NCBI GenBank assembly: GCA_964187785.1
Contig: OZ076414.1
Span: 34,038,001-34,102,000, forward strand
DNA from: Amphiscolops sp. MND2022
Taxonomy: Eukaryota
Direction: 5' to 3'
DNA length: 64,000 nt
The stretch's first letter is position 1; each line of letters starts with the position of its first letter. Made by a program: the position numbers and the translations under genes. The notes under the pieces were generated by a model that was not told the DNA's origin, did no database searches, and saw only the letters and a program-made list of their open reading frames with translations. This document shows positions 38,410 to 57,635 of the stretch, one piece after another.

Positions 38410-40483
38410 TGTAAAGGTTCGATTGGGTTTAGGAGAAATTAGCCTTCTGAGATTCTTGATCAATAGTGTTTAGGAGTTAGTTTGCGACTATGCCTTCCTA
38501 AACCTTTACAAAAGTTGTCTCTAGGTCTTCCGAGTTCGCAGGAAGGACTTTGTTTCGAGAGAAGAGTTTGAATATATGAAAAGAATTTGAATTAGTTCGA
38601 GTATTATATTCAACAATGTTTGTTTTTACACAATACGCAAGAATACAATACAAACAGAATAATGTAATCATCCAAGTTGACACAAATATCCAATCAATAA
38701 TATCTGAATTGCTTAGCATTCACCACAAATAAATACATCAATTATTTAGGGAGCAATGTTCAGGTAAGTTGTTTAAATACTATAAAAACTGGAATTTTCT
38801 GATCTTATTGTCCAACAATTTGGTTAGGACAAGTGTGCTGACTTTTGGCCAGAATTCCAGTCTATTCAGACCGGTTTGGGGTTCCTAGAGTTCTCAACAA
38901 TGTAGTGAGAGTTACTAAGTCTATTGACAATTTACGTGAAAGGTTTGTCACACGTTCTAGCTTATAGGAAGCGAAGAACTAGCTTATAGGAAGCTGAGAG
39001 TTAAATAAAATAGTTTTAGCCTATATGACCAGCCAATTACTAGGTCGAAGACAGGGTTGTCTTGAGCATAGACTTATAAGAAGTCTTGCGAATCTAAGTA
39101 AATTAAAGGTCTTATCTAACCAGCATTCGCTAGGTTTTTGTTCGGACAAGATTGCCGATTGGGCTCGATCCAGAGGTTCGGTGCCGTGTTCTAAGAGTTT
39201 TAACCTATTGCAATGGACCAGCAAGTTTGCTAGGTCGAGAGGAAGACAAGTTTGTCTAAAGACTTTGAAGAAGTCTTGTGAGTCTAAGTGAGTTAAAAGG
39301 CCTTATTTCAACCAGCAGTTTGCTAGGTTGCTTTTTAGACAAGATTGTCAGAATTCTGTTCAATACTTTATAAGGTTACATGCATTTTACTTTTTAATCA
39401 GTTTGTTTTACTTGCAAGTTAGCTGCAGTTATTGAGATGATCTAGACTAGCAGTCGCTAAGTCTTGACGCAATCGCGTACTAAGAGGAAAGTGATCTCCG
39501 TCGAGAATTGTTTGGGAGCGTTTAGCTCTAGTTAGTTTTCCCTATGATTTTCATAGGAGAACCTTGTCGGTTGTTTGTCTCTTCAGTCACTAGGACTGGG
39601 GGTTGTCTATAAAAGACAGGTAGGAAAAGGGAGCAAAGAAAAAAGAGAAAAATTTTGAGTTGTGAATTTTGAAGTTATTTTCTAAGTTAAAGAAAATAAC
39701 TAACCTGAAGTTTGAAGCAAAGATTGGGTCGGAGAGATTTGTTCTCGCAAGAGAGAGATTTTTTGAGTGAGATGATTTATAGCAGAGGCGAAGAGGAGAG
39801 TCAGAGTGAGAGTGTGCGAGGGATTTATGCGAGAAAATTATATCTCAATTTGCTAGAGTCCGGCTTTTTATACGAGCCGACCGAACGGTACAACCAATCA
39901 AATCGATTGGCGTTTTTTATTGGATACGAAATTATTTCGTCATTATCTCGTCAATATTTTGTCCATAATTGGAATCGCATTCACTATTGGATGCAACCGA
40001 ATAGAAGTCGGCGGGGATTGCATCAGCTACCGAATATGTTCGGCTAACCGAGTTGGCTGACGCAACTCTTTGTATTTGTCAGGGGAATTAATCCTCTCAA
40101 GTGGGGGACTTTGTTCCCACTTGAGAATTCTTTTGTTTAAAATTGAGAATTTGGCCGTACAAGTGGCGCCTATTATTCTCTTTTCAGAGATATTTACTGG
40201 CACAAGTGGCGTCGCATATTGTCTTTTCAGGGGAGATAAAAGATAATTGTTTGCACAAGTGGCAAGCGTTTTCTTTCGTAGAGGGGAATTCTCCCTTTCA
40301 TATGACGCGCAGCTGTAATTTTGTTTATCTCTAAAATTCTTTCGAGCGTGCCTGGAGAATTGAAAGAATTTGAGTAAGAGTTCACAAAAATTGAATAAAA
40401 AAAATTCTAGCTCCGATTGAATAATTTTCTAAATATGTTTTTTCAAATATTAAAATGAAGAAAAAGTTGTGTTAAACATAACA
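38410..40483 (-). repeat. 3' LTR of giant element (2,074 bp)
   Basis: Direct repeat of 55562-57635, with internal duplications (16-bp ctagcttataggaagc x2; an ~190-bp-period degenerate pair). Confidence 0.96.
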
Positions 40484-40485
40484 AC

Positions 40486-41259
40486 TCACCCGGGGTTTAA
40501 GAATGATTGAGTTGAAAGGGGGGCATTCAGGGTATTTATGACTTTTACTTCGAAAAATATGGAATTGTTTTTTAGCCAGGGGTTCTCTGGGTTCATGAGT
40601 TCATCATGTGGGATGAAGCACAAGATGGTGATTGCTGTGTTGCTGGCTGTGGGAATAGGTTTCTTGAAGCACTCACTGTTATTGTTATTCGTCACAATGA
40701 GTTGTTTGTAGGGTTTGTAAATATTGCCTTGACCAAGGAGGTGTATCTCGATAACGCCTTGGAAGGGCCAAGTGAGTATCTCATCGTAGGGTCCCGGACA
40801 CATAGCCAAGCATACTGACATGTATTTCCCTTTGGCAGTGTCGATGCCATAAGGGTAAGCTCGTAGATGAAAGGTGTACCCAAAGGGTTGTGAGAAGAAG
40901 ATAGGGCTACAGACGTCTTTTAGGCTATTAGGATCACAATAGGGTGCTCTTACATGAGACAAACTTTTTTCGTATTTTTCAGCATTCTGAAAAATATCAG
41001 AAAATTGATCAAGCCTCCAAATAATTTTGTAGAGGTTCCAATCCCGTGGAATTGATTTCTTTTCGATACGAAGGACTCGCATCTCAAGTGCGTCGAGCTT
41101 TTTACTGATCTCGTGTATCATATCAGAATCAAATGTGTCATCTTTATATTGGGTGATATTGAGTTTTTGTCGAAGCAATAGTAACTCATTGATTAGGGAG
41201 TCCGTAAGGGACCTTTCATCTTCCAATTGTTCAATAAGGGTAGATGAGCTTGTGTTCAT
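40486..41259 (-). CDS. TRAF-like protein (coiled coil + TRAF-C/MATH domain, no RING or zinc fingers), 257 aa
   Basis: IIWRLDQF...SPIFFSQPFGYTFHLRAYPYG...GKYMSVCLAMCPGPYDEILTWPFQGVIEIHLLGQ...FKKP...FIPHDEL...LKNNSIFFEVKV follows the TRAF-C consensus strand by strand. Heptad-rich residues ~8-68. Confidence 0.92.
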   Translation of the reverse strand: MNTSSSTLIEQLEDERSLTDSLINELLLLRQKLNITQYKDDTFDSDMIHEISKKLDALEMRVLRIEKKSIPRDWNLYKIIWRLDQFSDIFQNAEKYEKSLSHVRAPYCDPNSLKDVCSPIFFSQPFGYTFHLRAYPYGIDTAKGKYMSVCLAMCPGPYDEILTWPFQGVIEIHLLGQGNIYKPYKQLIVTNNNNSECFKKPIPTASNTAITILCFIPHDELMNPENPWLKNNSIFFEVKVINTLNAPLSTQSFLNPG

Positions 41260-41295
41260 CTTGATAGGTCGTTCTGAAATTCAATGGAAAAGACT

Positions 41296-41805
41296 TTAAA
41301 TAAATGCTGAAATAGCTCTAATAGGTACCACAATCCTCTGGTAGCCTAGGGTCGGATTTTCCAATGTAAATTCTTGACGGTTAGAATCCCAGAATACAAT
41401 ATTCCAAGGATTATATTCGCGTTTCAAAAGATAATTTAATTCGGTCCGGAATCGTGGGTTCCTGGTGAAAATATATTTATTAGCAGCTTCCTCGTTTTTT
41501 CGTTGTTGTCGTAGTTTCTCGTGAGCCGAGAGGGAAGCTTTTTGCCTTTTATGAGAACGCTTAATGGACGTTGAATGAGGTCGTTTAGTGGGTAGGGGTG
41601 TTGTTTTTAAGTTGTTGCGCGGAGGAGGTGGTGCTGTTTCAGTAACACCTTCTGCAATAGTTTCCGTTGAGAGAAACTCTAAATCTGTTGGGGAAAGCAA
41701 GGGGAGATCAAGTAGTCCGCTGTTGTCGAGTTTTGGTTCACCTGTTAATAACTCGATTTCTTCAGCCACAGTTTTGTCGGTTTGCATATTCTGAATACTA
41801 AACAT
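41296..41805 (-). CDS. Accessory ORF-D, ~163-169 aa: acidic N-terminus, Pro-rich linker, basic NLS-like stretch, small C-terminal domain
   Basis: Long ORF on the element's coding strand between env and TRAF. The acceptor tttagtattcAG (41791) lies just before ATG 41787 (MQTDK). Confidence 0.75.
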   Translation of the reverse strand: MFSIQNMQTDKTVAEEIELLTGEPKLDNSGLLDLPLLSPTDLEFLSTETIAEGVTETAPPPPRNNLKTTPLPTKRPHSTSIKRSHKRQKASLSAHEKLRQQRKNEEAANKYIFTRNPRFRTELNYLLKREYNPWNIVFWDSNRQEFTLENPTLGYQRIVVPIRAISAFI

Positions 41806-41815
41806 AAAAATACAA

Positions 41816-43924
41816 TTACACCGGAGAAACAGTATGGGTATTCGAAGTAGGGGGCCTACTTATGGCAGGGTAAATGTGTTCGAGGGTTTCGTGCTCATTG
41901 TAATTTTTGTCTGGAGGGGTATCTGAGACCATTGGGTCATGTTGGGGAACTTGATTAAGTGTTGATATCATCGAAACTGTGAATAGATTGTAGGTTGCTG
42001 ATAGAAGTATTTTGCCAATACCCCAAGAAGCTCCTGTAACTCGGTGTAGTTCAAATGAGCGAAATGTTATAACAATCACATTGACCAAAAACTTGATAAG
42101 AAGAAATCCACCAAACCACTGTCCCAATTTGCTAAACCAGTATTCGATAATACCAAAAGTGCTGATGAACTGTTCCTTGAAATATCCTGGTGATATCATG
42201 TTATCCACATAGAAATTTGTACGTGGTGCAAAGTAACCAAATTCGTCTGGTCCTTTGTCGGCAGCTGAAGGTATAATGAGTTCTCGTGAAAACTTTTGCA
42301 AGGCATTCCTCGAAGCCGCGCTGATCAGAATATTGTCCCAAAAATCGCTGAGTTGTCCTTTTGTGTACATTCCAGCATCTTGAGACTCATCGAAAGCATC
42401 TTTTGTGAAAGGAGAAATCTCTTTCGGACCGAAGATAGCAGGTCTATCTCTATGTGTAGGCTCTGGATTTAAAGAAAACCAAGAGTCCTTGTCTTGCATA
42501 TCTAGTTGAAAAAGGTTCTTTATTCTATCTGTGCAATTTTGGGTATTTGCGTTAGGGTAGGTTTGTCTGGTGATGGGGTCTACGAATTGAATTTGTCCCT
42601 TGTAGAATATGGGTATTTTGTCATAACAATTGTTCATGACATGAAGAGGTGATGAAATCAGTGGGCATGAATAGAGCCAGGCGAGACTACCATCAGTTTC
42701 AAGGAACATGGATCTATTTCCAGTAAGCATGTATCCAGCAAGGCGTGGATTTTCCAAAGACAGCATTAAAATAGTTAGAATTTGGGTTCGTTCCTGTTCG
42801 CACTGGTTTTTCAACATTTGAATTTCGGAAGATTGCAGTGCTCGGGTGCTTTCGAAGAACAGGTAATCCAGTTTTGTTCAAACTTGCATTTCATAATCCA
42901 TGTTGAGCCAAGTATTAACGTACTTGTCTTTAACTGTGGCATCTCTGTTGTACACGTAAAGTCCAGGTTTCCCAGAATTGTCTGTGGAGTATTGGAGGGT
43001 ATAAGATCCTCTTGTTATCCCCATCTTTCTTCCGGAGGCCATGTCAAATCCACCGGTATGTATCACAATGTACATGGACTCGTAATTTGTGGGATATACG
43101 TCGTTTGGTTTGTTGCAGAATTTTTGAGGGTAGTTCTTCACTTCGAACAAAAATTTGGAGGAGGAATCGTTGGTGCTCACCATGTGATACCTGTGTTCAT
43201 TTTTTATCATATTCACATGTTCTTCTTTCAATACTGAAAGTACACAGTTATCTGGGTGATCCCAAATATAGGCGTAGGGATCCAAGGATGTGCTTTGGCA
43301 ACCCAGATCGTCAAGTTTGCATGGGAGAGGATTTCCATTTACATTGTGAACTGTTCCATCTCTCAGCTTGACGGGTAGGGTAACATCTTGAATGTGACTC
43401 TCAAAAGTATCTTTGATCATCCAAGACCTTCCAGTGCAATGGTTTCTGTTTTCTTCGCTCTTCTTTCCGTTCGTATAGGACTGAGTTAGTTTGTTTCCCT
43501 TTTTAAACTGGACCATGTGATCCAATATTTGTATCTTTCCCTCTTCTCGTGCTCTTCGACATTGTTCGGGGCTCAAATCGATATCGCTAGTTATTGTACT
43601 TTGTTCTGCATCGATACTCGCATGGTCATGATATCCACAATGCCATTTGAATCTACTGTGCTTTAGGCGGCACATAGTGGCATTGAGTTCTGTACGAAAG
43701 TGCTTCGTGTAGACAGTGATTATGGCTGGGTTGATTTCAATATTTTCTGGGGAAACGTGGCAGGGTCTCACTTGATTGAGCGCATATAATTTGTTTTCGG
43801 TCATTTCTCCACAATCATAGTGCGATACACTAAGCCTTTGTGCGATGTCATCCAGGTTTGGATTGGGGAGGCTATTGATTAGGGAGTAGCACGTAATGAA
43901 TAATATCAAAATTTTACTGCACAT
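41816..43924 (-). CDS. env: Envelope glycoprotein, chuvirus G / herpes gB-type class III fusion protein-like; 702 codons with one in-frame TGA (42878-42880)
   Basis: N-terminal signal peptide. Cys pattern YDC..., CRLKHSRFKWHCGYHDH, SPEQCRR, LPCKLDDLGC, KNQCEQER...ENPRLAGYML, CYDKIPI...DPITRQT...QNC. N-glycosylation sequons and C-terminal hydrophobic segments. The two listed ORFs are in the same frame. Confidence 0.85.
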
Positions 43925-44037
43925 TTTGGAACTAACTGGGGGAAATCTTAGGTGTTTGCCAGAGCTCAGTTTTCAGAGGGGCAAACTGTTAAGAAGAAAA
44001 AATCAAAAAGAGGAAAGTTAAACGGTAGCTTGCTAAC

Positions 44038-44189
44038 CGAGAGTTGGTGGAGTCGAATTTGACAACCAGTTAGAATCAAATTGATTCTATTGTTGAAGAA
44101 TGTTCTTCAGAAACGAGAGTTGGTGGAGTCGAATTTGACAACCAATTAGAATCAAATTGATTCTTTTGTTGAAGAATGTTCTTCAGGAA
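44038..44189. repeat. Two 76-bp direct repeats, each with two palindromes, upstream of env
   Basis: Units at 44038 and 44114; each has agaatcaa-a-ttgattct and gaagaa-tg-ttcttc. Confidence 0.9.
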
Positions 44190-44503
44190 CTGAAACGAGA
44201 CAATTATTGTCTAACGTTTTCAACCAGGGTGAACACCGAATTTGGATTTGATAGCTTGCTAACCAAAAATAGGTGTAGTCACAGTGATCACTGCTTTAGA
44301 TTTGAGATTGGTGCACAGGTCTATGGATTGAAGATTTCAGTGTCTGGCTCAATTGATAGCCGTTTTCATAAGTACTGAAAGTACACTCTGTTATCAGAAG
44401 TGAAGTTATGGAATTTGGGATTTGAAGTGAAAGTTGAGAAAGAGGATCGTAAAATTTTATTTACCAAACAAAAATTTATTTCAAAACGAAAATGAGATGA
44501 AAT

Positions 44504-44968
44504 TTACAAATCATAAAACTGGATAAGATCCTTGTACAATTTGCTATATTTAGGTGAAGTGACACACTCAATGTCCATGACACTGGTTAATTCACCTAAC
44601 ACAAGCAGATCAAATTTGGTGATGTGCCTTTCAGGTCTCTGTTCGTATGACAGGAGGGAAGCTGCTAGTGACGCGTATAGAAGGGTGTCCTTGTAGATTT
44701 GTTTCTGATACTTTTTGTCAGGCAGGTCGTAACGTTCAAAGTGAACGCAAATCTTGAATTCGTAGGTCCAAGTCCACCGAATATAGGTGATCAAAAATTG
44801 TTTGTTGTTTTCAGCAACGAAAATAGTCCAGGGGCAATTGAAACTGAGTTCTTCGTACTTTTTCTCCCAGAGGGTATCCAAGTAAATAGTAGGAGGAGGA
44901 TAAATTTGAGTAATCCTCGGTTTTGTTCTTTTGCGTGAGTCTTTTTTGAGAATAGACTGTGGGTTCAT
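44504..44968 (-). CDS. Accessory ORF-B, 154 aa from MNPQSILKK (paralog of ORF-A)
   Basis: Starts in the TAATG overlap. Followed by two AATAAA (44480-44475, 44461-44456). Motifs align with ORF-A. Confidence 0.8.
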   Translation of the reverse strand: MNPQSILKKDSRKRTKPRITQIYPPPTIYLDTLWEKKYEELSFNCPWTIFVAENNKQFLITYIRWTWTYEFKICVHFERYDLPDKKYQKQIYKDTLLYASLAASLLSYEQRPERHITKFDLLVLGELTSVMDIECVTSPKYSKLYKDLIQFYDL

Positions 44969-45186: not shown

Positions 45187-45214
45187 ACGACGAACTGAAA
45201 TAGTCAAAAGTTTT

Positions 45215-45642
45215 TTACCCACGGCAGAGATTGATACTATGATCGTTACCGTGCTGAAAAGTTATTTACCCACGGCAGAGATTGATACTTTGATCGTTAC
45301 CGTGCTCGTTTTTGTGAAAAATTCTTTACCCACGGCAGAGATTGATGCTATGATCGTTACCGTGCTGAAAAGTTATTTACCCACGGCAGAGATTGATGCT
45401 ATGATCGTTACCGTGCTGAAAAGTTATTTACCCACGGCAGAGATTGATGCTATGATCGTTACCGTGCTGAAAAGTTATTTACCCACGGCAGAGATTGATA
45501 CTTTGATCGTTACCGTGCTCAATTTTGTGAAAAAGTTATTTACCCACGGCAGAGATTGATACTATGATCGTTACCGTGCTCAATTTTGTGAAAAAGTTAT
45601 TTACCCACGGCAGAGATTGATACTATGATCGTTACCGTGCTC
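45215..45642. repeat. Tandem array of 8 units (51, 60 or 61 bp), each containing an imperfect inverted repeat
   Basis: Units start at 45215, 45266, 45326, 45377, 45428, 45479, 45540 and 45601; core cacggcagagattgatactatgatcgttaccgtg. Confidence 0.95.
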
Positions 45643-45748
45643 AAGAATTTCTGAAACGAAGGACTACAAATTAGTTATCAGTTTACGTTAAAATGACAAT
45701 GAAGAGAAGAGAAAAAGAATTTTGACAAGAAGACTTTTATTTACAATA

Positions 45749-48549: not shown

Positions 48550-51500
48550 TTAATCTTTATAACCTTTCCGTTCTATATCCCTGAGAGAACTACCAGGGGT
48601 GCTTCGTTCGTATTTGGGGTCTTTGGGTTTTTCGGAAAACCGTGTAGATACTTTCTTTTTGAAGTTTGATAACTTTCCTGTTTTTGGGGAAATTTGGTCG
48701 GGGGGAGGCACTGTGTGGATAGGAGGGACGGATGGGAGAACCGGCGTTCTCTTTGGTAGGGGAGTGTTAGAAGAGAAAGCGAGCGGCAAAACTGCCATTG
48801 GGAGGCGTGGTGTTTGCATAGGTGGGAGTGGGTTTGTTTTACAACTTTGAGGGGTACGTTCCCCTGGAGCGGTGTTGCTAGAAGTAGATGGGATCGGGGT
48901 GTGAAATTGTGGTGTTTTCGGGGAAAGGAATCCAGAATCAGTACTGGGGGAAAATTCTGAACCTTTAGAAGTATTGTTACTCGGTCCTGAAAGGGGGGTT
49001 ATGATAAGTGGCATAAAATCTAGTTTATGCTCAGGTTGTCCCGAGTTGTGTTTGTCAATTTGAGTTTGGATCAAATGCTTGTAAAAATTATCGTCCTGTT
49101 CTACGGGAGCGTAATTTGTCAGCAATGGGGGTAAAGTTTCCTCTTTGGGAAAATACTCTAGTAAGTGGTTTCGGTGAGTTACTTTAACATTTTCGGGGTT
49201 CTCATCTTCTTTAATCTCGTATGTGGTATTGGTTATTTGTTTTGTTACCGTGAAAGGTCCCACTCGTAATTGTTTCAATTTCTGTGATTTGGATAGGTCG
49301 GGTTTGTGATTCTCCAATAGGACTTTTTGACCAACCGCGAGCGGTCGTCCTAGTTTGAAACGGTTCCGATACTCATGAGCTTTCGATGTGATTTCTCTAC
49401 ATCTTTTGTAGGTAGATGAGTATATTGATTTGAAATCGTTTTCTCTTGTAAGTAGTTCGGAAGATAACTGTGGTCTAAGGAGTCGGTCGAGGGACTTGTT
49501 TCTGAGGTTATTCTCACTATGGGTGTGGGGTTGTAAATCTGCACAAAATTCTGATTTACATTGTTTGTTTTTGTCGCGAAATAGCCCAAGTTTCAAAGTC
49601 ATCGGTATCTGAGGTTTGACGCCGAAGACAATCTCGTAGGGGGTCATACCCGTTGTGTAATTTACACTTGTGTTATGGGCAAAAGCGAATTTAGATGCAA
49701 GTGTTGACCAGTTGTTTCCTGACTCATTGGTGAAATTCCTCCAGTATCTCATGAGGTGTTTGTTTTGGACTTCAACTTTGCCATTTGTCCAGGGCGAATA
49801 AGCAGTGCGCGGTGCCAGCGTTATTCCGAACTCTTTGGTCCAATTTACAAAATCACGGTTGATAAACGCTGAGCCATTGTCGTGGACGATTTTTTGGGGA
49901 ATGCCGTAGGATGTGATCCATTTTTCTAGGGCATTGATTGTAGTCTGGGCTCCTGTATCTCGGACCGGATAGACTCCAAGAAATCTTGAGAATGCATCTA
50001 CTACAACTAGACAATGTGTATTCAGGTTACTGCTTGGTCTGATGGGACCTTTGTGGTCGATATGGATTGTTTTGAAGGGGGTTGTCTCGAGTTCGCCCCA
50101 TTGTTCAAGAGGAGCTTCTTGTAGATCGTGTCGTTTAGACTTGTTAGTCTGGCATTGTAGACAATCTTCTATCAGGGATACTATCCACTTATATCGTCCA
50201 GGCCAAAAGAAGTTTTGTCTGATGTTTTCGAATGTTTTAAATATGCCTGGGTGGCCACTGTGAGTATGAGCGTGGGCCAGATTAAAGAGGGGTAGGAATA
50301 ATGATAAGGGGACACAGATTTTCATTTCGTATTTGTCCGTTCCATGAATAGGTTCGTTATAGCAGAGTAGGTTGCTTTCTTTATCGAGAAAAAGTTGGTT
50401 GAAATTGTTGAAGTACGATAGCAAAGCCTTCGATTGGTGGATCTCTGGTGTTTTGGTGTTCGGCTTGTTCTTGTTTCTAACCCAAGCTCGTACAATTTGT
50501 AATACAGGATCGTTGATTTGTTCTGCAACTAAGGTGGTGATGTCCAAATCAGCGGTTTTAGAGTAATCGCTGAGTTTTTGTAAGAGGTCTTTGGTATCAA
50601 CGTGTGGGAATTGCTCGACATCTAAATTCTTGTTCAATAGAGGCCTTTCACTTTTCTGTGAAATGTTCTTTTCTTTCGCAGTTGATTTATCGCGATAGAA
50701 CTCGTGGTCTTCGCTGGAAAGGTGAAGTTCGGCGACTTCCTCTTCATCGTCACTGGAATCGGTTTCGATGTCGTCAATTCTACTATACTCGGGTTCATAC
50801 TGTATTTTGTATGAGGGTAGACAGAGGTTTTTGTATTGATTGATGGATTTTCCCAGTTTGAAACAGTCAGCGATGTCTTGGCGAGTCGCCATTACTGTTT
50901 GTTGGTTCTCATAGTGTTCTACTTCATGTTCTTCTCCGTCATTCTTGAGATGGAGTAGCCTTTGATCTTTGCCTTTTTGGCAGAGGATAGGGAAAAAGTC
51001 ATTGCTGCCACAATGACCATCGTCATTATGCTCGATTGCATAGTGTATTTTCGATCCAAATTCATCATAGAAACTGATATCTCGCGGTATCTCTTTGTGT
51101 AGTTTTTGTAAGTTTTTGGTTTCTTCCAGCGTGACATTTCTACTAAGTATGTCTGGAAATGCGAGGTTGGATCCTTTAGTCCAGATGATTTTGAGGTTTT
51201 GGAACTTGGTGATGATTACCTGATACTTGAAAAAGCGATGTGAAAGCTGTCCTTTTCTTCCCCAGAGGTATAAAATAGGTTTGTGATCGCAATAGAGGTA
51301 TATTGGAAATGGAGATCCAATAATGTAGTGTTCGTATGTTTGGAGTGCTGATACTATGCCACACAATTCGCGATGAAGGGTGGACATCTTTTGTTCAGCT
51401 TTGTCAAATACGCGGGAATTGAAAGAAACTATCCTTTTTCCTTCTGGAAATTGTTGAACTAGTATACAACCAGTACCAACGTTCGAAGAATCGACGTGTA

Positions 51501-52570
51501 TGTGGAAGGGGTACTCAGTTGAAGGGACAGCAAGAATAGTGTCCTCACATATACGACTTTTTATATCAGTGAAGAGGTCTTCGTGTTCTTTCGTCCATTT
51601 GAAAGGCGTTGTAGCTTTTATCAAATCGTAGAAGGGCTGGCTATCCACGTGTAAGTTTTTGATATAGCAACTGTAAAATCCAAGACAGCAAAGTACTTTC
51701 ATCACATCTCTTTTACTTTCGGGTGATTTTAAGTTTTTTAGATCCTGTACTCTTTTTGCTAAGGGTTGTATTCCTTGTTCAGAAATAACATGTCCTAGGA
51801 ATTTGACTTTCCTGATGAAGAAATTCGTCTTCTCAGGTGCAGCTTTAAGTCCGGCTTTCCTCAGGAGCTGATGGTACTCATGAATTATCGTGAACATTTC
51901 TTGTTTGGTCTGAGCCTGCATAAGACTGTCATCAAGATAGGTGATAGCTTGTTTTCGCTTGATGAGGGGCTCAAAATGTATAGCCATGAGACGGCTAAAA
52001 AAGTTTGGAAGTCCACAGAGTCCGTAGAAACCGCGTACATACGTGTATTGTTTTCCGCCGATAATAAAACTAGTGAGTTTTTGGGTCTCGTCGCTCAAAG
52101 GTACTTGGTGATATGCGCAGGATAAATCGCTGACCGTGAAGTACTTTCCGTTAATTCGAGTCATAATCATCTGAATGGGTTCCAATGGCCACGAGTAATT
52201 TGTCAGATCTGTTATGGAGTTTAAGTAGCGGGCGTCGATTACTAACTTTACGTAGTCTGCTTTGGGCATCAGAATGATCGGATTGACAAAAAGGGAACCT
52301 AGTTCGTCATCGTCTCCCATTTCTCTAATGATATCGGCTTCTTGGATTCGTCCAAGTAACTTCTCAAGTTTGTCCTTCAAGTGAAGGGGTACTTTGCTTG
52401 GTCGTTGTTTCTTGAGTTCTGAATTGGCTTTGAGTGTTACGTGAAATTTTTGACGTACTTTTCCCACGTCAAATTTGTGTTGTGAGTACACGTCCGCTGA
52501 GTCAATAAGCATGTCTATCAAGACAACCAATTCTTCATCTTCGAGGTCAGTATATCGGAAATCGAATTTC
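48550..52570 (-). CDS. pol: Pol part 2: RT, RNase H, linker insert, integrase (HHCC, DDE, GPF), Pro/Ser/Thr-rich tail
   Basis: YLDD at 51939-51928. RNase H: VDSS, ELCG, CDH, PD. IN: HAHTHSGH...CLQC, IDHKGP, HDNG, GKVE, VGPF. Joined to part 1 by a -1 shift near 52570. Confidence 0.95.
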
Positions 52571-54137
52571 TTTCATATTCCTTGATTTCCTCAGGCTGAT
52601 ATTGGAGATAGTAATCAATTAGTGCGTCATTGTCTTCTTTTGCTCTAAGCTCGACAAATTGTTCTGTACAGGGTGGCTGACACGATTTAGCATCCGTAGC
52701 AAAATTTGTTTCAAGTTCTTCAGTACCATTAGCAAATTGTTCTGTATAATAGTCAATATCTCCTTCTTCTACTTCTTCTTTTCGTATGGAAGCGTTAACA
52801 AATTGGAGGTTCGGTTCGTTTCGTGATACGATCTCGACTTTAATATGTCCATAATCGAAGCTGTTACGGATTATGTCCAAAGCTCCTTTCCAGTGAATGT
52901 TATCTAAGCCATCTTCAATTTTGGGTATTGAAATTGCAGGTATATTGTTTAGTTGTGCGTGTCCAACCAAATTTTCGATGCAACTGCGAAAATCTTCGGG
53001 TTTAATTTTTTCGTAACATCTCTTTTTTGCAACTAGTCCATAGATGAAGCGACTGGCTTCGTTATCCCAAAAGGGTAAAACTGATCCGACGAAAGGTTTC
53101 GACTGGTTCACGAAATTCTGAAAATCTTTCTTCTGTTCGCACAACCTTTTTGCGAACGTGGTTGTCATTTTTCCATCTGCTGAGACACAAAAGGCTAGAT
53201 TTGCATTTGAGGCTCGAAGGGTCTCGCCGGAGCCGTGGCTTAGAAAAACTTGTTGATCTCCTTCGTGTTCGAAGGGAACTGTTGAGTGTAGCAAGAAACA
53301 GTCGTTGTAGTCTGGGTTTTCCTTTAAAATTGTGTTGACCATCGTGACGCAATCCTTTATCTGGAACTTTGGTCGTTCTTTTTCCTGTAGGTCTATGATA
53401 GCATGACCAATTATTCCTCTATTAAGGGTTATTTGGTGATTTCGATTATTTTCAATCAAAATTGGCAGGTGGGATTCGGACTTCGTACATAAAACATTCA
53501 CAAAGGTAAGTCCTGTTTTGACTGCATTTTTGTGGGGTGTGAATGATGTTCCGGGTGCAAAATGTCTGTTATTTTCGCGGGAGTACTTGTGTAGGCGGGT
53601 AGTTTTGGCATCGATGCAAATTGGGTTATCTGTTCGTATTGTTTCGACCTTTGAAACGTATGGGAAAGGTTTGGTAGCACAAAGGTTACCGTAGCAAATC
53701 GTGTTAGGACTGTCTTTCAATTCGATTGCAGGCAAATCAAAATGTAATTTAGAAACAAGTTGACGGCAGAAATCTATTCCCAGTAAATTGGGTGTCTTCG
53801 CTTCTGTTATCCAAAACTTTAGCTCTACAGGATGGAGTCCATCCGAGTCGAAACTGAATGTGATTGTTGTTGATCCAAACATCGGTATAACTTCACCAGT
53901 ATAGGTTTTAGTCAGTTGTTTGCTCCTGACTACCGTGATGGGTTGTCCAAACTGTGCAATTTCCTCAAAAGCTCTGTAATTGATGATTGAACAGGCTGCT
54001 CCTGTATCTAGCATGAATTCTATTTCTAACCCACTATCTTTTTTGGAGTCTCCGGTGGGAAAAAAGAAGAGATTTAGGTGAAAACGTGATTTGAGGTTAC
54101 TTTCTTCGTCAGGTCGCGGAGACTTTAGCAGTTTAAA
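52518..54137 (-). CDS. pol: Pol part 1: aspartic protease, dUTPase-like remnant and TARG1/Poa1p-like macrodomain
   Basis: MLDTGA...LLGIDF protease. Macro region 52827-53249 (AFCVSADGKM...FIYGLVAKKR...ISIPKIEDGLDNIHW). Confidence 0.88.
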   Translation of the reverse strand, partial: FKLLKSPRPDEESNLKSRFHLNLFFFPTGDSKKDSGLEIEFMLDTGAACSIINYRAFEEIAQFGQPITVVRSKQLTKTYTGEVIPMFGSTTITFSFDSDGLHPVELKFWITEAKTPNLLGIDFCRQLVSKLHFDLPAIELKDSPNTICYGNLCATKPFPYVSKVETIRTDNPICIDAKTTRLHKYSRENNRHFAPGTSFTPHKNAVKTGLTFVNVLCTKSESHLPILIENNRNHQITLNRGIIGHAIIDLQEKERPKFQIKDCVTMVNTILKENPDYNDCFLLHSTVPFEHEGDQQVFLSHGSGETLRASNANLAFCVSADGKMTTTFAKRLCEQKKDFQNFVNQSKPFVGSVLPFWDNEASRFIYGLVAKKRCYEKIKPEDFRSCIENLVGHAQLNNIPAISIPKIEDGLDNIHWKGALDIIRNSFDYGHIKVEIVSRNEPNLQFVNASIRKEEVEEGDIDYYTEQFANGTEELETNFATDAKSCQPPCTEQFVELRAKEDNDALIDYYLQYQPEEIKEYERNSISDILTSKMKNWLS

Positions 54138-55519
54138 GGATTGAACGAGATTGTACTAACTCTGTCCTGTCCTTCTTCGTCAATGAACTGTACGGAGTTT
54201 GGGAAACTGTCATTGTTGGTTGGGAAATTTCGGTTGTACTCAGAATTTGTGTTTTGTGGTCGTGCACTGAAGTTATACGGGCTATTTGGCCTATTTCCAG
54301 TATAGGGTGTATTGTTTCGCAAATTGGTGCTAGTAGAAGTTGGTCTACTACCTGAAGAGTGATTGTTATTGCCATTGAAGTTGTTGAAGTTGTTCGACTG
54401 CTGAGAATTATTTCGGTTCCAGTTTTCATTTCGATTGTTTCCTTCGTTAGGTCTGCCTCTGTTGAAGTTTTGGTTCGACTGTTGGTTGCTTCTTTGATTA
54501 TTGGTGAAGTTCGGTCTTGGTGAAGACTGATAATTTTGTTGTGACCCAAATCCGGGTCCCTTCCGTTTGTTGTAGTCGTTGGTGAAGGTGACCTTCTTCT
54601 CTTCATTAGCTCGTGATTGTGCTCTCTTGGCTTCGTCATCGTAGATCTTCTTTCGGCAATATTGGAGTGTATGACCATTCCTTTGGCAATATTTACAAAA
54701 TCGTGTGATGTTTTGGCGGGACGTGTTATTTACGTCTACTGCAGAGACGTGATAGTCATGACAGTGAGAGGATGGGCATCCGTAGGGTAGAGAGTTAGTC
54801 ACAGCTAAAGAATTGACTTGTTGTTCTTTTAGCATATTCTTCATTGCGTTGATGTCTTCTCGTAGTTCGTTTATCAACGTTTTCTGGTTTTGTGAGGAGT
54901 TCGGAGCTAGCTGAGAGCTGATAGTAAAAACAAGGTCTTTATTAGTTACATGTTCCTGAAATTGTTCCCAAGTAGCGTTGGGGTGTTCAATTAGGTATTG
55001 GTGAGCCTTGTTCTTTAGTTCGTTTGGCGTTAGTCCTCTGACTGCAAATTCAATGTACTTTTGCCTTCTTTGGGCATTCAGGGCAGCCCTGGCTGCGTTA
55101 TCAGCATTTTCTTCATCTGGCCATCCTCTATCGACAGCTCGTTTCACTCGGTGAAAGTAGTTCTTTATTATTTCTTCATTTCCTCTGACACTGTTTTCTG
55201 CAGTTATTCTATATCTGTATTTATCTCTGTTGTCGGAAAAGCGGGTTAGAAAATGTGCTCGAATATATTGCCAGTCGTGTCCATCGTCTATGTTGTCTGC
55301 ATACCATTCAGCGGCAGGTCCTCTTAGGAGTGATGAAAAAAGTGCCTTTTTGCGAAAAAGGTATCTTGCGCGTTCGTCGGCATTGTCGGGTTCATGACCC
55401 ATCGAGAAATTGATTTTGTTTTCAACGGTTGTTAGGAATGATCTAACATCTTGTTCAGGATCGTTCCCTGAAAATTTGTCCGAAGCGAGGTCGGGAAATG
55501 AAACTGTGTTATCTGCCAT
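54125..55519 (-). CDS. gag: Gag, 464 aa, intact
   Basis: Ty3-type capsid (KFSG...LLRGPAAEWY...FLTRF), CCHC knuckle CKYCQRNGHTLQYC, and an N/Q/R-rich nucleocapsid tail. Confidence 0.93.
   Translation of the reverse strand: MADNTVSFPDLASDKFSGNDPEQDVRSFLTTVENKINFSMGHEPDNADERARYLFRKKALFSSLLRGPAAEWYADNIDDGHDWQYIRAHFLTRFSDNRDKYRYRITAENSVRGNEEIIKNYFHRVKRAVDRGWPDEENADNAARAALNAQRRQKYIEFAVRGLTPNELKNKAHQYLIEHPNATWEQFQEHVTNKDLVFTISSQLAPNSSQNQKTLINELREDINAMKNMLKEQQVNSLAVTNSLPYGCPSSHCHDYHVSAVDVNNTSRQNITRFCKYCQRNGHTLQYCRKKIYDDEAKRAQSRANEEKKVTFTNDYNKRKGPGFGSQQNYQSSPRPNFTNNQRSNQQSNQNFNRGRPNEGNNRNENWNRNNSQQSNNFNNFNGNNNHSSGSRPTSTSTNLRNNTPYTGNRPNSPYNFSARPQNTNSEYNRNFPTNNDSFPNSVQFIDEEGQDRVSTISFNPLNC
54131..54137 (-). 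promoter_or_regulatory. -1 ribosomal frameshift slippery heptamer U UUA AAC
   Basis: In gag frame CCT TTA AAC TGC TAA. The -1 frame is open without stops into LEIEFMLDTG (protease). An 8-bp stem agtctccg/cggagact begins 6 nt downstream. Confidence 0.85.
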
Positions 55520-55540
55520 TCTTCTCTTTTGCTTGAATGT

Positions 55541-55558
55541 GCCTCACTGGTCGCACCA
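55541..55558 (-). promoter_or_regulatory. Primer binding site of giant element
   Basis: TGGTGCGACCAGTGAGGC, 3 nt after the LTR. The implied tRNA 3' end GCCUCAC-UGGUCGC-A-CCA has a T-arm like elongator tRNA-Met or tRNA-Ile(UAU); this assignment is inference. Confidence 0.8.
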
Positions 55559-55561
55559 GTT

Positions 55562-57635
55562 TGTAAAGGTTCGATTGGGTTTAGGAGAAATTAGCCTTCT
55601 GAGATTCTTGATCAATAGTGTTTAGGAGTTAGTTTGCGACTATGCCTTCCTAAACCTTTACAAAAGTTGTCTCTAGGTCTTCCGAGTTCGCAGGAAGAAC
55701 TTTGTTTCGAGAGAAGAGTTTGAATATATGAAAAGAATTTGAATTAGTTCGAGTATTATATTCAACAATGTTTGTTTTTACACAATACGCAAGAATACAA
55801 TACAAACAGAATAATGTAATCATCCAAGTTGACACAAATATCCAATCAATAATATCTGAATTGTTTAGCATTCACCACAAATAAATACATCAATTATTTA
55901 GGGAGCAATGTTCAGGTAAGTTGTTTAAATACTATAAAAACTGGAATTTTCTGATCTTATTGTCCAACAATTTGGTTAGGACAAGTGTGCTGACTTTTGG
56001 CCAGAATTCCAGTCTATTCAGACCGGTTTGGGGTTCCTAGAGTTCTCAACAATGTAGTGAGAGTTACTAAGTCTATTGACAATTTACGTGACAGGTTTGT
56101 CACACGTTCTAGCTTATAGGAAGCGAAGAACTAGCTTATAGGAAGCTGAGAGTTAAATAAAATAGTTTTAGCCTATATGACCAGCCAATTACTAGGTCGA
56201 AGACAGGGTTGTCTTGAGCATAGACTTATAAGAAGTCTTGCGAATCTAAGTAAATTAAAGGTCTTATCTAACCAGCATTCGCTAGGTTTTTGTTCGGACA
56301 AGATTGCCGATTGGGCTCGATCCAGAGGTTCGGTGCCGTGTTCTAAGAGTTTTAACCTATTGCAATGGACCAGCAAGTTTGCTAGGTCGAGAGGAAGACA
56401 AGTTTGTCTAAAGACTTTGAAGAAGTCTTGTGAGTCTAAGTGAGTTAAAAGGCCTTATTTCAACCAGCAGTTTGCTAGGTTGCTTTTTAGACAAGATTGT
56501 CAGAATTCTGTTCAATACTTTATAAGGTTACATGCATTTTACTTTTTAATCAGTTTGTTTTACTTGCAAGTTAGCTGCAGTTATTGAGATGATCTAGACT
56601 AGCAGTCGCTAAGTCTTGACGCAATCGCGTACTAAGAGGAAAGTGATCTCCGTCGAGAATTGTTTGGGAGCGTTTAGCTCTAGTTAGTTTTCCCTATGAT
56701 TTTCATAGGAGAACCTTGTCGGTTGTTTGTCTCTTCAGTCACTAGGACTGGGGGTTGTCTATAAAAGACAGGTAGGAAAAGGGAGCAAAGAAAAAAGAGA
56801 AAAATTTTGAGTTGTGAATTTTGAAGTTATTTTCTAAGTTAAAGAAAATAACTAACCTGAAGTTTGAAGCAAAGATTGGGTCGGAGAGATTTGTTCTCGC
56901 AAGAGAGAGATTTTTTGAGTGAGATGATTTATAGCAGAGGCGAAGAGGAGAGTCAGAGTGAGAGTGTGCGAGGGATTTATGCGAGAAAATTATATCTCAA
57001 TTTGCTAGAGTCCGGCTTTTTATACGAGCCGACCGAACGGTACAACCAATCAAATCGATTGGCGTTTTTTATTGGATACGAAATTATTTCGTCATTATCT
57101 CGTCAATATTTTGTCCATAATTGGAATCGCATTCACTATTGGATGCAACCGAATAGAAGTCGGCGGGGATTGCATCAGCTACCGAATATGTTCGGCTAAC
57201 CGAGTTGGCTGACGCAACTCTTTGTATTTGTCAGGGGAATTAATCCTCTCAAGTGGGGGACTTTGTTCCCACTTGAGAATTCTTTTGTTTAAAATTGAGA
57301 ATTTGGCCGTACAAGTGGCGCCTATTATTCTCTTTTCAGAGATATTTACTGGCACAAGTGGCGTCGCATATTGTCTTTTCAGGGGAGATAAAAGATAATT
57401 GTTTGCACAAGTGGCAAGCGTTTTCTTTTGTAGAGGGGAATTCTCCCTTTCATATGACGCGCAGCTGTAATTTTGTTTATCTCTAAAATTCTTTCGAGCG
57501 TGCCTGGAGAATTGAAAGAATTTGAGTAAGAGTTCACAAAAATTGAATAAAAAAAATTCTAGCTCCGATTGAATAATTTTCTAAATATGTTTTTTCAAAT
57601 ATTAAAATGAAGAAAAAGTTGTGTTAAACATAACA
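55562..57635 (-). repeat. 5' LTR of giant element (2,074 bp)
   Basis: Direct repeat of 38410-40483. The minus strand has several CCAAT boxes upstream of TATAAAAA (57024-57017). Confidence 0.96.
57017..57024 (-). promoter_or_regulatory. TATA box of the LTR promoter
   Basis: TATAAAAA preceded on the same strand by multiple CCAAT motifs; same site at 39865-39872 in the other LTR. Confidence 0.6.

What the first reader, a model, noticed from the sequence alone, without database searches (positions are those of the whole stretch)
38410..57635. Giant, recently inserted, enveloped Ty3/gypsy element with a virus-like accessory gene set
The element is 19.2 kb, against about 5-8 kb for typical gypsy elements, with 2.07-kb LTRs that differ at only about 4 sites and a 4-bp TSD. 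Besides gag-pol it carries a macrodomain, a class III fusion glycoprotein, a TRAF-like protein and at least four orphan ORFs. All lie on one strand with splice and poly(A) signals. Entry protein plus putative ADP-ribose and TNF/Toll signalling modulators in one LTR element resembles a complex infectious retrovirus built on a Metaviridae chassis. I know of no described element with this combination, but novelty needs a search.
Basis: partly seen in the sequence, partly recalled or inferred. Interest (0 to 1): 0.96.

Follow-up and report, generated by a model that had tools for sequence, protein, structure and literature searches.

The report
Giant enveloped gypsy element, accessory genes
This is a young but slightly broken 19-kb copy of an abundant retrovirus-like jumping gene that carries a viral envelope gene plus conserved ADP-ribose-removing and TRAF-like genes, a gene set that is unusual but has a published precedent in flatworm 'Burro' elements.

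Summary
Two 2,074-bp LTRs (4 mismatches, TG..CA ends) lie at 38410-40483 and 55562-57635, flanked by a TAAC duplication. All genes are on the minus strand. They are gag, a Pro-Pol with a TARG1/OARD1-type macrodomain between protease and RT, a Monjiviricetes-type fusion glycoprotein, a RING-less TRAF-like protein, and three conserved orphan ORFs.

The accessory region is not a nested insertion. The same gene order recurs in a 97%-identical copy at another locus and in an 80%-identical copy. It also recurs in relatives with 60% Pol identity in a second assembly, and the 3' cassette occurs in a third. Against the 80%-identical copy, dN/dS for env, TRAF and the orphans is 0.04-0.17.

This copy is defective, with one frameshift in pro-pol and one premature stop in env. 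Intact versions of both genes exist elsewhere.

The novelty claim is overstated. Env-carrying Ty3/gypsy elements are known across animals. Planarian Burro elements already combine giant size, a TRAF-MATH domain and a mononegavirus-like env. The new points are the Pol-embedded macrodomain, the gene order and two orphan gene families.

The class III fold, splicing and the host could not be verified. Verdict: a new variant of a known kind, of moderate to high interest.

The parts
38406..38409 (.). Target-site duplication, copy next to the 3' LTR (TAAC)
38410..40483 (-). 3' LTR in element sense, 2,074 bp, TG..CA
   Evidence: 4 mismatches and no indels against the other LTR
40486..41259 (-). TRAF-like gene (257 aa): coiled-coil plus TRAF-C/MATH domain (MATH about 40552-40914), no RING or TRAF zinc fingers
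   Evidence: Pfam MATH 8e-22. PDB TRAF1/5/2/3 1e-12 to 1e-10. The 90% cluster has 61 members. dN/dS 0.04 against L002.
41296..41805 (-). Conserved orphan ORF (169 aa, 'o187 family') between env and TRAF: acidic N-terminus, basic patch, conserved C-terminal domain
   Evidence: Found in L002-L008. dN/dS 0.11. No Pfam or PDB match.
41816..43924 (-). Envelope-like fusion glycoprotein gene (Pfam PF24664 Monjiviricetes_fusion), with signal-like segment 43868-43924 and TM segment 42047-42127. Broken once by a premature stop; other copies encode 702 aa.
   Evidence: dN/dS 0.04-0.05.
44035..44186 (.). Tandem repeat, two 76-nt units, just upstream of env
44504..44968 (-). Conserved orphan ORF (154 aa from ATG, 'o210 family')
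   Evidence: Homologues in L002, L004, L005, L007, L008, L009. dN/dS 0.17. The 90% cluster has 32 members, one variant on 15 contigs.
45206..45707 (.). Tandem array of 51-nt units (about 8 copies) between the two paralogous orphan ORFs
45749..46159 (-). Orphan ORF (136 aa), paralogue of the o210 family
   Evidence: dN/dS 0.06. The cluster has 21 members, one variant on 19 contigs.
46160..48549 (-). 2.4-kb stretch after pol without a supported gene. Its small ORFs are low-complexity and poorly conserved or not conserved in L002.
48550..54155 (-). Pro-Pol gene (PR, macrodomain, RT, RNase H, integrase). Broken once by a frameshift; other copies have a single 1,821-aa ORF.
53760..54032 (-). Aspartic protease domain (DTG/DSG motifs)
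   Evidence: Pfam Asp_protease_2 E 6e-4, below its cut-off. Motifs.
52830..53207 (-). TARG1/OARD1-type macrodomain inside Pro-Pol
   Evidence: PDB 2l8r/4j5q E 2.5e-10. Foldseek TARG1 prob 1.00, TM 0.62. The aligned Lys and Asp are at least 90% conserved in 70 relatives.
51202..52461 (-). Reverse transcriptase plus RNase H (YLDD present)
   Evidence: Ty3 Gag-Pol 7q5b E 1.9e-55. Pfam. Motif.
49162..50310 (-). Integrase (HHCC zinc domain, core, C-terminal SH3-like domain)
54131..54137 (-). Slippery heptamer TTTAAAC in the gag frame inside the 28-nt gag/pro overlap; putative programmed -1 frameshift site
54125..55519 (-). gag (464 aa) with one CCHC zinc knuckle
   Evidence: Pfam Retrotrans_gag E 3.5e-4, below its cut-off. 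CCHC. The 90% cluster has 89 members, most 464 aa.
55541..55558 (-). Putative tRNA primer-binding site (starts TGG, 3 nt after the 5' LTR); tRNA not identified
   Evidence: No tRNA gene in the window or loci.
55562..57635 (-). 5' LTR in element sense, 2,074 bp
57636..57639 (.). Target-site duplication, copy next to the 5' LTR (TAAC)

Best explanation
The region is one recent insertion of a multi-copy, retrovirus-like Ty3/gypsy (Metaviridae-type) LTR element from an unidentified eukaryotic host, probably an invertebrate animal.

Shown:
- The gene order is 5'LTR-PBS-gag-(-1 shift)-Pro[PR-macrodomain]-Pol[RT-RH-IN]-spacer-two paralogous orphan genes-env (Monjiviricetes-type glycoprotein)-orphan gene-TRAF-like gene-3'LTR.
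- This plan is shared by other copies and by divergent relatives.
- The env, TRAF-like and orphan genes evolved under purifying selection.
- This copy carries two inactivating lesions: one frameshift in pro-pol and one stop in env.

Inferred from the families involved:
- Genomic RNA is made from the 5' LTR. Gag and Gag-Pro-Pol are made through a -1 ribosomal frameshift at the slippery heptamer. Replication is tRNA-primed, and integration makes a 4-bp duplication.
- Env and the 3' genes are presumably expressed from subgenomic, probably spliced, RNAs.
- Env would let particles leave and enter cells.
- The TARG1-like macrodomain would remove ADP-ribose marks laid down by host ADP-ribosyltransferases on proteins, or on the element's nucleic acids.
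- The TRAF-like protein has a trimerising coiled coil and a receptor-binding TRAF-C domain but no RING. It would act as a decoy that blunts TRAF-dependent immune or death signalling.

Because of its two lesions, this copy could at most be propagated with proteins from intact relatives.
For: Structure: LTR pair, TG..CA ends, TAAC TSD. PBS beginning TGG 3 nt after the LTR. CCHC in gag, DTG, YLDD and HHCC motifs. Pol is closest to Ty3 (7q5b, E 1.9e-55). TTTAAAC lies in frame in the gag/pro overlap.

Accessory genes: macrodomain, glycoprotein, TRAF-like protein.

The accessory genes belong to the element:
- There are no internal LTR or TIR pairs.
- L004 is 97% identical and colinear over 12.9 kb up to the LTR end, then has a different flank.
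- L002 is about 80% identical with the same order.
- L003 and L008, from another assembly with 60% Pol identity, have PR-macro, env, the o187 family and TRAF in the same order.
- L006, from a third assembly, has env, the orphan ORF and TRAF, all open.

Selection: dN/dS against L002 is 0.06 for pol, 0.04-0.05 for env, 0.04 for TRAF, and 0.11, 0.06 and 0.17 for the orphans.

Abundance: 90%-identity clusters hold 89 (gag), 168 (pro-pol), 133 (env) and 61 (TRAF) distinct sequences, and some single variants occur on 15-19 contigs.

Lesions: other cluster members are 1,821 aa (Pro-Pol) and 702 aa (Env).
Against: - There are no expression data. Splicing, promoter and poly(A) use are unverified (only motifs).
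- The class III fold of Env was not confirmed. The AF2 model was poor (pLDDT 43.7), Foldseek gave nothing, and the profile against PDB gave nothing.
- The functions of the macrodomain and the TRAF-like protein are inferred from homology only.
- The best non-element relatives of the TRAF-like protein are unnamed multi-MATH proteins at about 30% identity, so 'TRAF' may be too narrow a label.
- dS against L002 is near saturation for some genes. L002 is degraded, so only conserved local alignments were counted.
- The gag assignment rests on position, a CCHC knuckle and sub-threshold Pfam hits.
- All relatives come from ENA assemblies without names; the nine places I looked up lie in three assemblies. 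The host is therefore unknown.
- The frameshift could be a long-read assembly error.
Confidence: 0.8

Rival explanations
1. The accessory region (macrodomain, or the 3' block with env and TRAF) is a separate nested insertion or an assembly chimera, not part of the element.
For: The 4.6-kb gap between pol and env holds tandem repeats and no supported gene in its first 2.4 kb. The pol half and the 3' half differ in divergence from L004: dS 0.097 against about 0.01.
Against: There are no internal LTR or TIR pairs. The same order and colinearity appear in L004, L002, L003, L005, L006, L007 and L008, across three assemblies. The macrodomain lies inside one open reading frame with PR, and with RT in relatives.
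Confidence: 0.03
2. The accessory genes are passengers: host gene fragments transduced by the element, with no role in its life cycle.
For: LTR elements do pick up extra ORFs downstream of pol (PMC6431247). The TRAF-like and orphan proteins diverge faster between lineages (30-45% identity) than Pol or Env (about 60%).
Against: dN/dS is 0.04-0.17 for these genes between subfamilies, similar to pol. The genes are retained in the same positions in lineages with only 60% Pol identity. A deletion derivative that lost most of pol still keeps env, the orphan ORF and TRAF. The aligned active-site Lys and Asp of the macrodomain are at least 90% conserved in 70 relatives.
Confidence: 0.08
3. The accessory genes are functional but do not antagonise immunity. 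The macrodomain might act on ADP-ribosylated nucleic acids or on the element's own proteins. The MATH domain might be an adaptor for ubiquitin or trafficking machinery used in particle assembly. The orphans might be regulatory (RNA export or transcription) proteins.
For: The macrodomain's nearest folds after TARG1 are DarG macrodomains, which act on DNA. The closest non-element MATH relatives are multi-MATH proteins, not canonical TRAFs. The o187 family has a basic patch typical of nucleic-acid-binding or nuclear proteins.
Against: The best PDB matches of the MATH domain are TRAF1/2/3/5, including the preceding coiled coil. The Burro precedent groups MATH_TRAF_C with BIR and BCL2-like apoptosis modules. 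Nothing here discriminates directly between the two readings.
Confidence: 0.3
4. The family is the endogenous trace of a currently circulating infectious retrovirus-like agent, rather than a germline-confined retrotransposon.
For: Copies with open 702-705-aa env ORFs exist. Env is under strong purifying selection. Lineages are diverse within one assembly.
Against: No relative was found in IMG/VR viral contigs. No near-identical copies were seen shared between assemblies. High copy number fits germline amplification. Drosophila env-bearing elements also remain endogenous (PMC13524379).
Confidence: 0.25

Closest known systems
Burro / GYPSM1 giant gypsy-like LTR retrotransposons of planarians (Grohme et al. 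2018; Jurka 2007; reviewed in Arkhipova & Yushenova 2019, PMC6431247)
   Same: An oversized Ty3/gypsy element with a MATH_TRAF_C module, which is an accessory ORF in Dugesia. Its env region resembles mononegavirus fusion glycoproteins, and an extra enzyme domain is inserted between PR and RT. It was interpreted as a provirus that interferes with host apoptosis and ubiquitin systems.
   Different: Burro exceeds 30 kb and has a roughly 4,900-aa polyprotein. Its env is in frame between gag and pol, the domain between PR and RT is a dUTPase, and it also has BIR, BCL2-like, ankyrin and SUMO-like modules. Here the element is 19.2 kb. Env is a separate ORF 4.6 kb downstream of pol, and the PR-RT insert is a TARG1-like macrodomain. 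No BIR, BCL2, ankyrin or dUTPase hits were found. Sequence relatedness to Burro was not testable.
Env-carrying Ty3/gypsy 'errantiviruses' across Metazoa (Chary & Hayashi, eLife 2026, PMC13524379)
   Same: They have gag-pol-env within LTRs and multiple near-identical copies. Their env is either F-type or gB-type (class III). The authors also report a chuvirus-like glycoprotein next to gypsy POL.
   Different: Here the gap is 4.6 kb and the gag-env span is 13.7 kb. The paper does not mention a macrodomain, TRAF or further conserved ORFs. Placement of this pol in their tree was not tested.
Anakin: mosquito BEL/Pao elements with a captured chuvirus glycoprotein (Dezordi et al. 2020, PMC7642597)
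   Same: An LTR element carrying a Jingchuvirales/Monjiviricetes-type glycoprotein as env.
   Different: Its backbone is BEL/Pao rather than Ty3/gypsy, its hosts are insects, and no macrodomain or TRAF-like gene is reported.
[quoted passage not shown] 2009, cited in PMC4977317)
   Same: A reverse-transcribing LTR element carrying a macrodomain.
   Different: These are Retroviridae of vertebrates, and the macrodomain is an additional ORF. Here it is a domain of a Ty3/gypsy Pro-Pol polyprotein.
Macrodomains of positive-strand RNA viruses (corona-, alpha-, hepeviruses) and virus-encoded TRAF-like proteins of fish iridoviruses (own knowledge, not tested here)
   Same: A macrodomain embedded in a replicase polyprotein that is thought to reverse antiviral ADP-ribosylation, and a TRAF-domain protein used to interfere with host death or NF-kB signalling.
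   Different: These are unrelated virus classes. The macrodomain here is of the TARG1/DarG clade rather than the MacroD type (a Chikungunya virus macrodomain appears only at rank 46).

Membership tests
Ty3/gypsy (Metaviridae-type) LTR retrotransposon | Paired LTRs with TG..CA ends and a short (4-6 bp) target-site duplication | tested here: met
   2,074-bp LTRs, 99.8% identical, TAAC on both sides
Ty3/gypsy (Metaviridae-type) LTR retrotransposon | pol domain order PR-RT-RH-IN (integrase after RT) | tested here: met
Ty3/gypsy (Metaviridae-type) LTR retrotransposon | RT/RH closest to Ty3/gypsy rather than copia, BEL or Retroviridae | tested here: inconclusive
   The best solved relative is Ty3 Gag-Pol (E 1.9e-55), against 1e-21 or weaker for foamy, caulimo- and gammaretroviral RTs. 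No phylogeny against GyDB, Repbase or Dfam was possible.
Ty3/gypsy (Metaviridae-type) LTR retrotransposon | gag with capsid and nucleocapsid, PBS next to the 5' LTR, PPT next to the 3' LTR | tested here: inconclusive
   A CCHC knuckle is present, and Retrotrans_gag is below its cut-off. The PBS starts TGG but the tRNA is unidentified. The tract before the 3' LTR is only weakly purine-rich.
Env-carrying Ty3/gypsy ('errantivirus' sensu Chary & Hayashi) | gag, pol and an env-like membrane glycoprotein on one strand between the LTRs | tested here: met
Env-carrying Ty3/gypsy ('errantivirus' sensu Chary & Hayashi) | Multiple highly similar genomic copies | tested here: met
Env-carrying Ty3/gypsy ('errantivirus' sensu Chary & Hayashi) | Compact gag-pol-env layout (pol-env gap at most 1 kb, span at most 10 kb in their screen) | tested here: not met
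   The gap is 4,625 bp and the span 13,704 bp.
Class III viral fusion glycoprotein | Membership of a sequence family held to be class III (chuvirus-like / gB-like) | tested here: met
   PF24664 matches at 1e-13 and 1e-22 here, and 5e-39 to 1e-43 in uninterrupted relatives.
Class III viral fusion glycoprotein | Class III fold (elongated multidomain trimer with a central helix and internal fusion loops) | tested here: inconclusive
   The AF2 model of a relative had pLDDT 43.7. Foldseek gave no hit with E below 2. Sequence and profile searches against PDB gave no hits.
Burro/GYPSM1 giant gypsy elements | Total length over 30 kb with a giant polyprotein and env in frame between gag and pol | tested here: not met
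   The element is 19.2 kb, and env is a separate ORF downstream of pol.
Burro/GYPSM1 giant gypsy elements | MATH_TRAF_C module | tested here: met
Burro/GYPSM1 giant gypsy elements | dUTPase between PR and RT; BIR, BCL2-like and ankyrin modules | tested here: not met
   No such Pfam hits were found, and a macrodomain occupies the PR-RT position.
Burro/GYPSM1 giant gypsy elements | Sequence relatedness of pol and env to Burro; planarian host | not testable with these tools
   No Burro sequence could be fetched, and the host of the assembly is unknown.
TARG1/OARD1-type macrodomain | Sequence and fold similarity to TARG1 | tested here: met
   E 2.5e-10 over 126 residues. Foldseek prob 1.00, TM 0.60-0.66, 28% identity. 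The macro part of the model has pLDDT 60-83.
TARG1/OARD1-type macrodomain | Active-site Lys and Asp (Lys84 and Asp125 of human TARG1; numbering from my own knowledge) | tested here: inconclusive
   The aligned Lys-Lys and Gly-Leu-Asp motifs are present and at least 90% conserved in 70 relatives. Identifying them with the catalytic residues rests on memory of the literature.
TRAF family | C-terminal TRAF-C/MATH domain preceded by a coiled coil | tested here: met
   Pfam 8e-22. The alignment to TRAF1 TRAF-domain constructs starts about 60 residues before the MATH domain.
TRAF family | N-terminal RING and TRAF-type zinc fingers (absent in TRAF1) | tested here: not met
   No RING or zf-TRAF hit down to E 0.1. 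The protein is only 257 aa.

The most novel reading that the evidence does not exclude
This would be a previously undescribed clade of complex, retrovirus-like Metaviridae. Its conserved core would include a dedicated set of host-defence antagonists: a TARG1-type ADP-ribose hydrolase built into Pro-Pol, a RING-less TRAF decoy, and two new protein families. Together with a Monjiviricetes-type envelope, these would make it an invertebrate counterpart of complex retroviruses, and the first reverse-transcribing element known to carry a macrodomain in its replicase polyprotein.
Probability: 0.3. Interest if true: 0.8.

Novelty: new variant of a known kind. Interest (0 to 1): 0.6.

Why it matters
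Accessory genes that act on host defences are a hallmark of complex retroviruses and large DNA viruses. They are rarely documented in LTR retrotransposons.

In this family a macrodomain, a TRAF-like protein and two orphan families are kept under purifying selection. They are retained across lineages whose Pol proteins are only 60% identical, and they sit next to a viral envelope gene. This gives a sequence-level handle on which host pathways (ADP-ribosylation, TRAF-dependent signalling) restrain retroelements in invertebrates.

The family also extends the Burro precedent beyond planarian-style polyproteins. In addition, published env-element screens used tight spacing limits, and those limits may miss elements with long pol-env intervals such as this one.

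Tried and rejected
Class III test: single-sequence PDB searches of both env pieces found nothing. A 63-sequence profile against PDB found nothing. An AF2 model of the longest relative, with that alignment, had pLDDT 43.7, and its Foldseek search gave no hit with E below 2. The test is inconclusive rather than negative.

Orphan ORFs: Pfam found nothing. Profiles of the two conserved families against PDB found nothing.

gag against PDB found nothing.

Host identification failed:
- All homologues come from unnamed ENA assembly proteins.
- The accession numbers are not in the paper library.
- Rfam and tRNA scans of the window and loci were empty.
- The window holds only transposable elements.

Exogenous relatives: none were found in IMG/VR.

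Nested-insertion idea: rejected.

Small ORFs between pol and the first orphan gene (my labels o141, o122, o97): rejected as genes, or left doubtful.

Literature searches for a macrodomain or TRAF in gypsy-type elements returned only the Burro review and the fish ERV note.

1. From the ORF tables I worked out, in my thinking, where the env stop lies.
2. My first notebook entry lists the bounds of the open pieces of env and pro-pol, which in effect brackets both breaks.

For dN/dS, I pooled codon-pair counts over separate local alignments.

Full report
1. OBSERVATION

A direct repeat of 2,074 bp lies at 38410-40483 and 55562-57635. The two copies differ by 4 mismatches and no indels. Each copy starts TG and ends CA. 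The four bases outside each end are TAAC, so the element is 19,226 bp long with a 4-bp target-site duplication. The LTRs make up 22% of the element, and the internal part is 15.1 kb.

All long ORFs lie on the minus strand. The element stands out from its surroundings by a strong strand asymmetry in composition.

2. ANATOMY (minus strand, 5' to 3')

- A tract beginning TGG lies 3 nt after the 5' LTR and is a plausible tRNA primer-binding site. I could not name the tRNA.
- gag (54125-55519, 464 aa) has a sub-threshold Retrotrans_gag match and one CCHC knuckle. It has no solved relative.
- The next frame overlaps gag by 28 nt in the -1 direction. The overlap contains TTTAAAC in the correct phase, a canonical slippery heptamer.
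- Pro-Pol (48550-54155) contains an aspartic protease with DTG.
- After about 180 unassigned residues it contains a macrodomain (52830-53207).
- Next come RT with YLDD and RNase H. About 300 unassigned residues follow, then an HHCC-type integrase with a C-terminal SH3-like domain.
- The best solved relative of RT-RH is the Ty3 Gag-Pol polyprotein (E 1.9e-55).

The macrodomain scored below Pfam's cut-off (E 0.027). It matches human TARG1/OARD1 (C6orf130) at E 2.5e-10 over 126 residues. An AF2 model of the ORF was poor overall (pLDDT 46), but the macro part scored 60-83. Foldseek placed TARG1 structures first (E 9e-6, probability 1.00, target TM 0.60-0.66), followed by DarG macrodomains. The Lys and Asp that align with the TARG1 active-site motifs are at least 90% conserved in an alignment of 70 relatives.

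Downstream of pol:
- A 2.4-kb stretch has no ORF that I can support. Its translations are low-complexity and not conserved.
- Two paralogous orphan ORFs follow (45749-46159 and 44504-44968). A 51-nt tandem array separates them.
- The envelope-like gene (41816-43924) comes next.
- A third orphan ORF follows (41296-41805).
- A TRAF-like gene (40486-41259) ends 3 nt before the 3' LTR.

The envelope-like protein matches Pfam PF24664 (Monjiviricetes_fusion) in both of its pieces (1.2e-13 and 1.2e-22). It has a signal-like N-terminus, 16 cysteines, and a TM segment followed by a tail of about 75 residues.

The TRAF-like protein has a MATH/TRAF-C domain (8e-22). It aligns with the TRAF domains of TRAF1, 5, 2 and 3, including about 60 residues of coiled coil before the MATH domain. 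It has no RING or TRAF zinc finger.

3. STATE OF THIS COPY

An exact look-up placed the window's protease-macro ORF and its pol ORF in one 90%-identity cluster. The representative of that cluster, and several of its members, are 1,821 aa long. The two env pieces fall in one cluster with several 702-aa members (L004).

So in other copies Pro-Pol and Env are each one open frame. This copy has one frameshift in pro-pol and one premature stop in env. I give counts only. gag, the three orphan ORFs and the TRAF-like gene are open. The insertion is young (4 LTR differences) but not autonomous as it stands. An assembly error at the frameshift cannot be excluded.

4. IS THE ACCESSORY REGION PART OF THE ELEMENT?

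Yes, for four reasons.

(a) The internal 15 kb has no second LTR pair and no inverted repeats.

(b) L004 is another contig of the same assembly (ENA ERZ25074608). It is 97% identical and colinear over 12.9 kb from pol to the last base of the 3' LTR, after which the flank differs. It is therefore an independent insertion of the same family.

(c) L002 is a degraded copy, about 80% identical, with the same order including all three orphan ORFs.

(d) In a second assembly (ERZ26859043), elements whose Pol is only 60% identical show the same plan (L003, L008). They have PR-macrodomain-RT in one frame, then integrase, small ORFs, a 705-726-aa glycoprotein, an o187-family ORF and a TRAF-like gene. A 4.1-kb contig of a third assembly (ERZ1742291) carries glycoprotein (702 aa), orphan ORF (162 aa) and TRAF-like gene (251 aa), all open.

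5. ARE THE ACCESSORY GENES FUNCTIONAL FOR THE ELEMENT?

Nei-Gojobori counts between this copy and L002 gave these dN/dS values:

| Gene | dN/dS |
|---|---|
| pol | 0.06 |
| env | 0.04-0.05 |
| TRAF-like gene | 0.04 |
| three conserved orphan ORFs | 0.11, 0.06 and 0.17 |
| two doubtful small ORFs | 0.23 and 0.35 |

Three caveats apply. dS is near or above 1 for several genes. L002 is degraded. Only local alignments were counted.

Two further observations point the same way:
- Between lineages, the accessory proteins diverge faster (30-45% identity) than Pol and Env (about 60%) but stay open.
- L005 is a deletion derivative that joins gag to the end of integrase. It still keeps env, the orphan ORF and the TRAF-like gene, and its TRAF-like protein heads a cluster of 85 sequences.

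Copy number is high. The 90% clusters hold 89 (gag), 168 (pro-pol), 133 (env), 35, 32 and 21 (orphans) and 61 (TRAF) distinct sequences. Single variants occur on up to 19 contigs.

6. MECHANISM

Shown: the structure, the conservation and the selection described above.

Inferred from established knowledge of LTR retroelements: transcription starts in the 5' LTR. Gag and Gag-Pro-Pol are made through a -1 frameshift. Reverse transcription is tRNA-primed, and integration makes a 4-bp duplication.

Inferred, untested: env and the 3' genes are expressed from subgenomic, probably spliced, RNAs. I saw only consensus TATA and poly(A) motifs in the LTR.

Inferred by homology:
- The macrodomain reverses ADP-ribosylation, as TARG1 does.
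- The TRAF-like protein can trimerise and bind TRAF-binding motifs but lacks the RING. It would therefore act as a decoy in TRAF-dependent signalling.

Alternative roles are listed as a rival explanation: nucleic-acid de-ADP-ribosylation, a MATH adaptor for ubiquitin or trafficking machinery, and regulatory roles for the orphan proteins. The best non-element relatives of the TRAF-like protein are unnamed proteins with up to 13 MATH repeats, at about 30% identity. A recent capture from a canonical TRAF gene is therefore not evident.

7. COMPARISON WITH WHAT IS KNOWN

Env-carrying Ty3/gypsy elements with F-type or gB-type (class III) envelopes are reported across animal phyla. The same paper notes that a chuvirus-like glycoprotein, structurally similar to gB, lies next to gypsy POL genes (PMC13524379). 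Its screen allowed at most 1 kb between pol and env and at most 10 kb in all outside insects. This family has a 4.6-kb gap and a 13.7-kb span, so the screen may have missed it. The paper does not mention macrodomains or TRAF.

The closest published precedent is Burro/GYPSM1 of planarians. These are giant gypsy-like elements (over 30 kb) with MATH_TRAF_C, which is an accessory ORF in Dugesia. They also have BIR, BCL2-like and ankyrin modules, a dUTPase between PR and RT, and an env region hitting mononegavirus fusion glycoproteins, in frame between gag and pol (PMC6431247).

Macro-domain ORFs have been noted in fish epsilon-like ERVs. My literature searches found no gypsy-type element with a macrodomain.

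The element is thus a new variant of a known kind. The new points are:
- the TARG1-type macrodomain inside Pro-Pol;
- the gene order, with env, an orphan ORF and the TRAF-like gene at the 3' end;
- the two conserved orphan families.

8. LIMITS

- The class III fold could not be tested.
- The host is unknown. Every homologue comes from unnamed ENA assembly proteins, and the nine places I looked up lie in three assemblies.
- No relatives were found in IMG/VR.
- No phylogeny against reference retroelement libraries was possible.

9. SLIPS

From the ORF tables I worked out in my thinking where the env stop lies. My first notebook entry lists the bounds of the open pieces of env and pro-pol, which brackets both breaks.

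While thinking I also wrote out the human TARG1 stretch shown, with three further residues from memory.

For dN/dS, only pooled counts over separate local alignments were kept.

10. VERDICT

This is a young, defective copy of an abundant env-bearing Ty3/gypsy family with a conserved accessory gene set. I rate it a new variant of a known kind, with interest 0.6.

Noticed in passing
window 31962-37686 (minus strand): A young Ty1/copia element lies about 720 bp from the focal element. It has 565-bp LTRs at 31962-32526 and 37122-37686 (98.9% identical), with gag, integrase and RVT_2 ORFs between them.
   Followed up: partly
window 24087-30043 (plus strand): A second Ty3/gypsy-like element has short 206-bp LTRs (99.5% identical) and RT-RH and integrase ORFs. 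The region has a very strong AT skew of +0.3 to +0.4.
   Followed up: partly
window 16078-16734, and 6881-7260 with 8933-9247: An RT fragment carries a 214-bp tandem duplication (98% identical). A separate pair of direct repeats of roughly 370 bp (overlapping 236- and 185-bp matches), about 95% identical, lies 2 kb apart and may be the LTRs of a small element.
   Followed up: no
L005 1805-10747 (ENA ERZ26859043): This is a deletion derivative of a related element. gag is joined to the C-terminal end of integrase, so PR, macrodomain, RT and most of IN are missing. It still has an open 705-aa env, the orphan ORF and the TRAF-like gene. Its TRAF-like protein heads a 90% cluster of 85 sequences, which suggests that non-autonomous env-bearing derivatives amplify.
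   Followed up: partly
L008 8107-8445 and 21463-22394 (ENA ERZ26859043): In this lineage the o210-family ORF lies just upstream of gag rather than upstream of env. The TRAF-like gene is 436 aa, with an N-terminal extension of about 300 residues that has no Pfam match.
   Followed up: partly
window 38410-51183 compared with L004: Divergence between the two near-identical copies is mosaic. Synonymous divergence is about 0.10 in pol but about 0.01 from the orphan genes to the TRAF-like gene, which suggests recombination between family lineages.
   Followed up: no
window 45206-45707: The 51-nt tandem array between the two paralogous orphan ORFs aligns in several registers with L004 and L002, so its copy number probably varies among copies.
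   Followed up: no
proteins P0321, P0322, P0325-P0328 (representative search): The closest non-element relatives of the TRAF-like protein are very large proteins with 6-13 tandem MATH domains (up to 3,052 aa). Six of them were looked up, and all come from unnamed assembly proteins (five ENA, one JGI/IMG). They point to a large MATH-domain expansion in some sequenced eukaryote.
   Followed up: no
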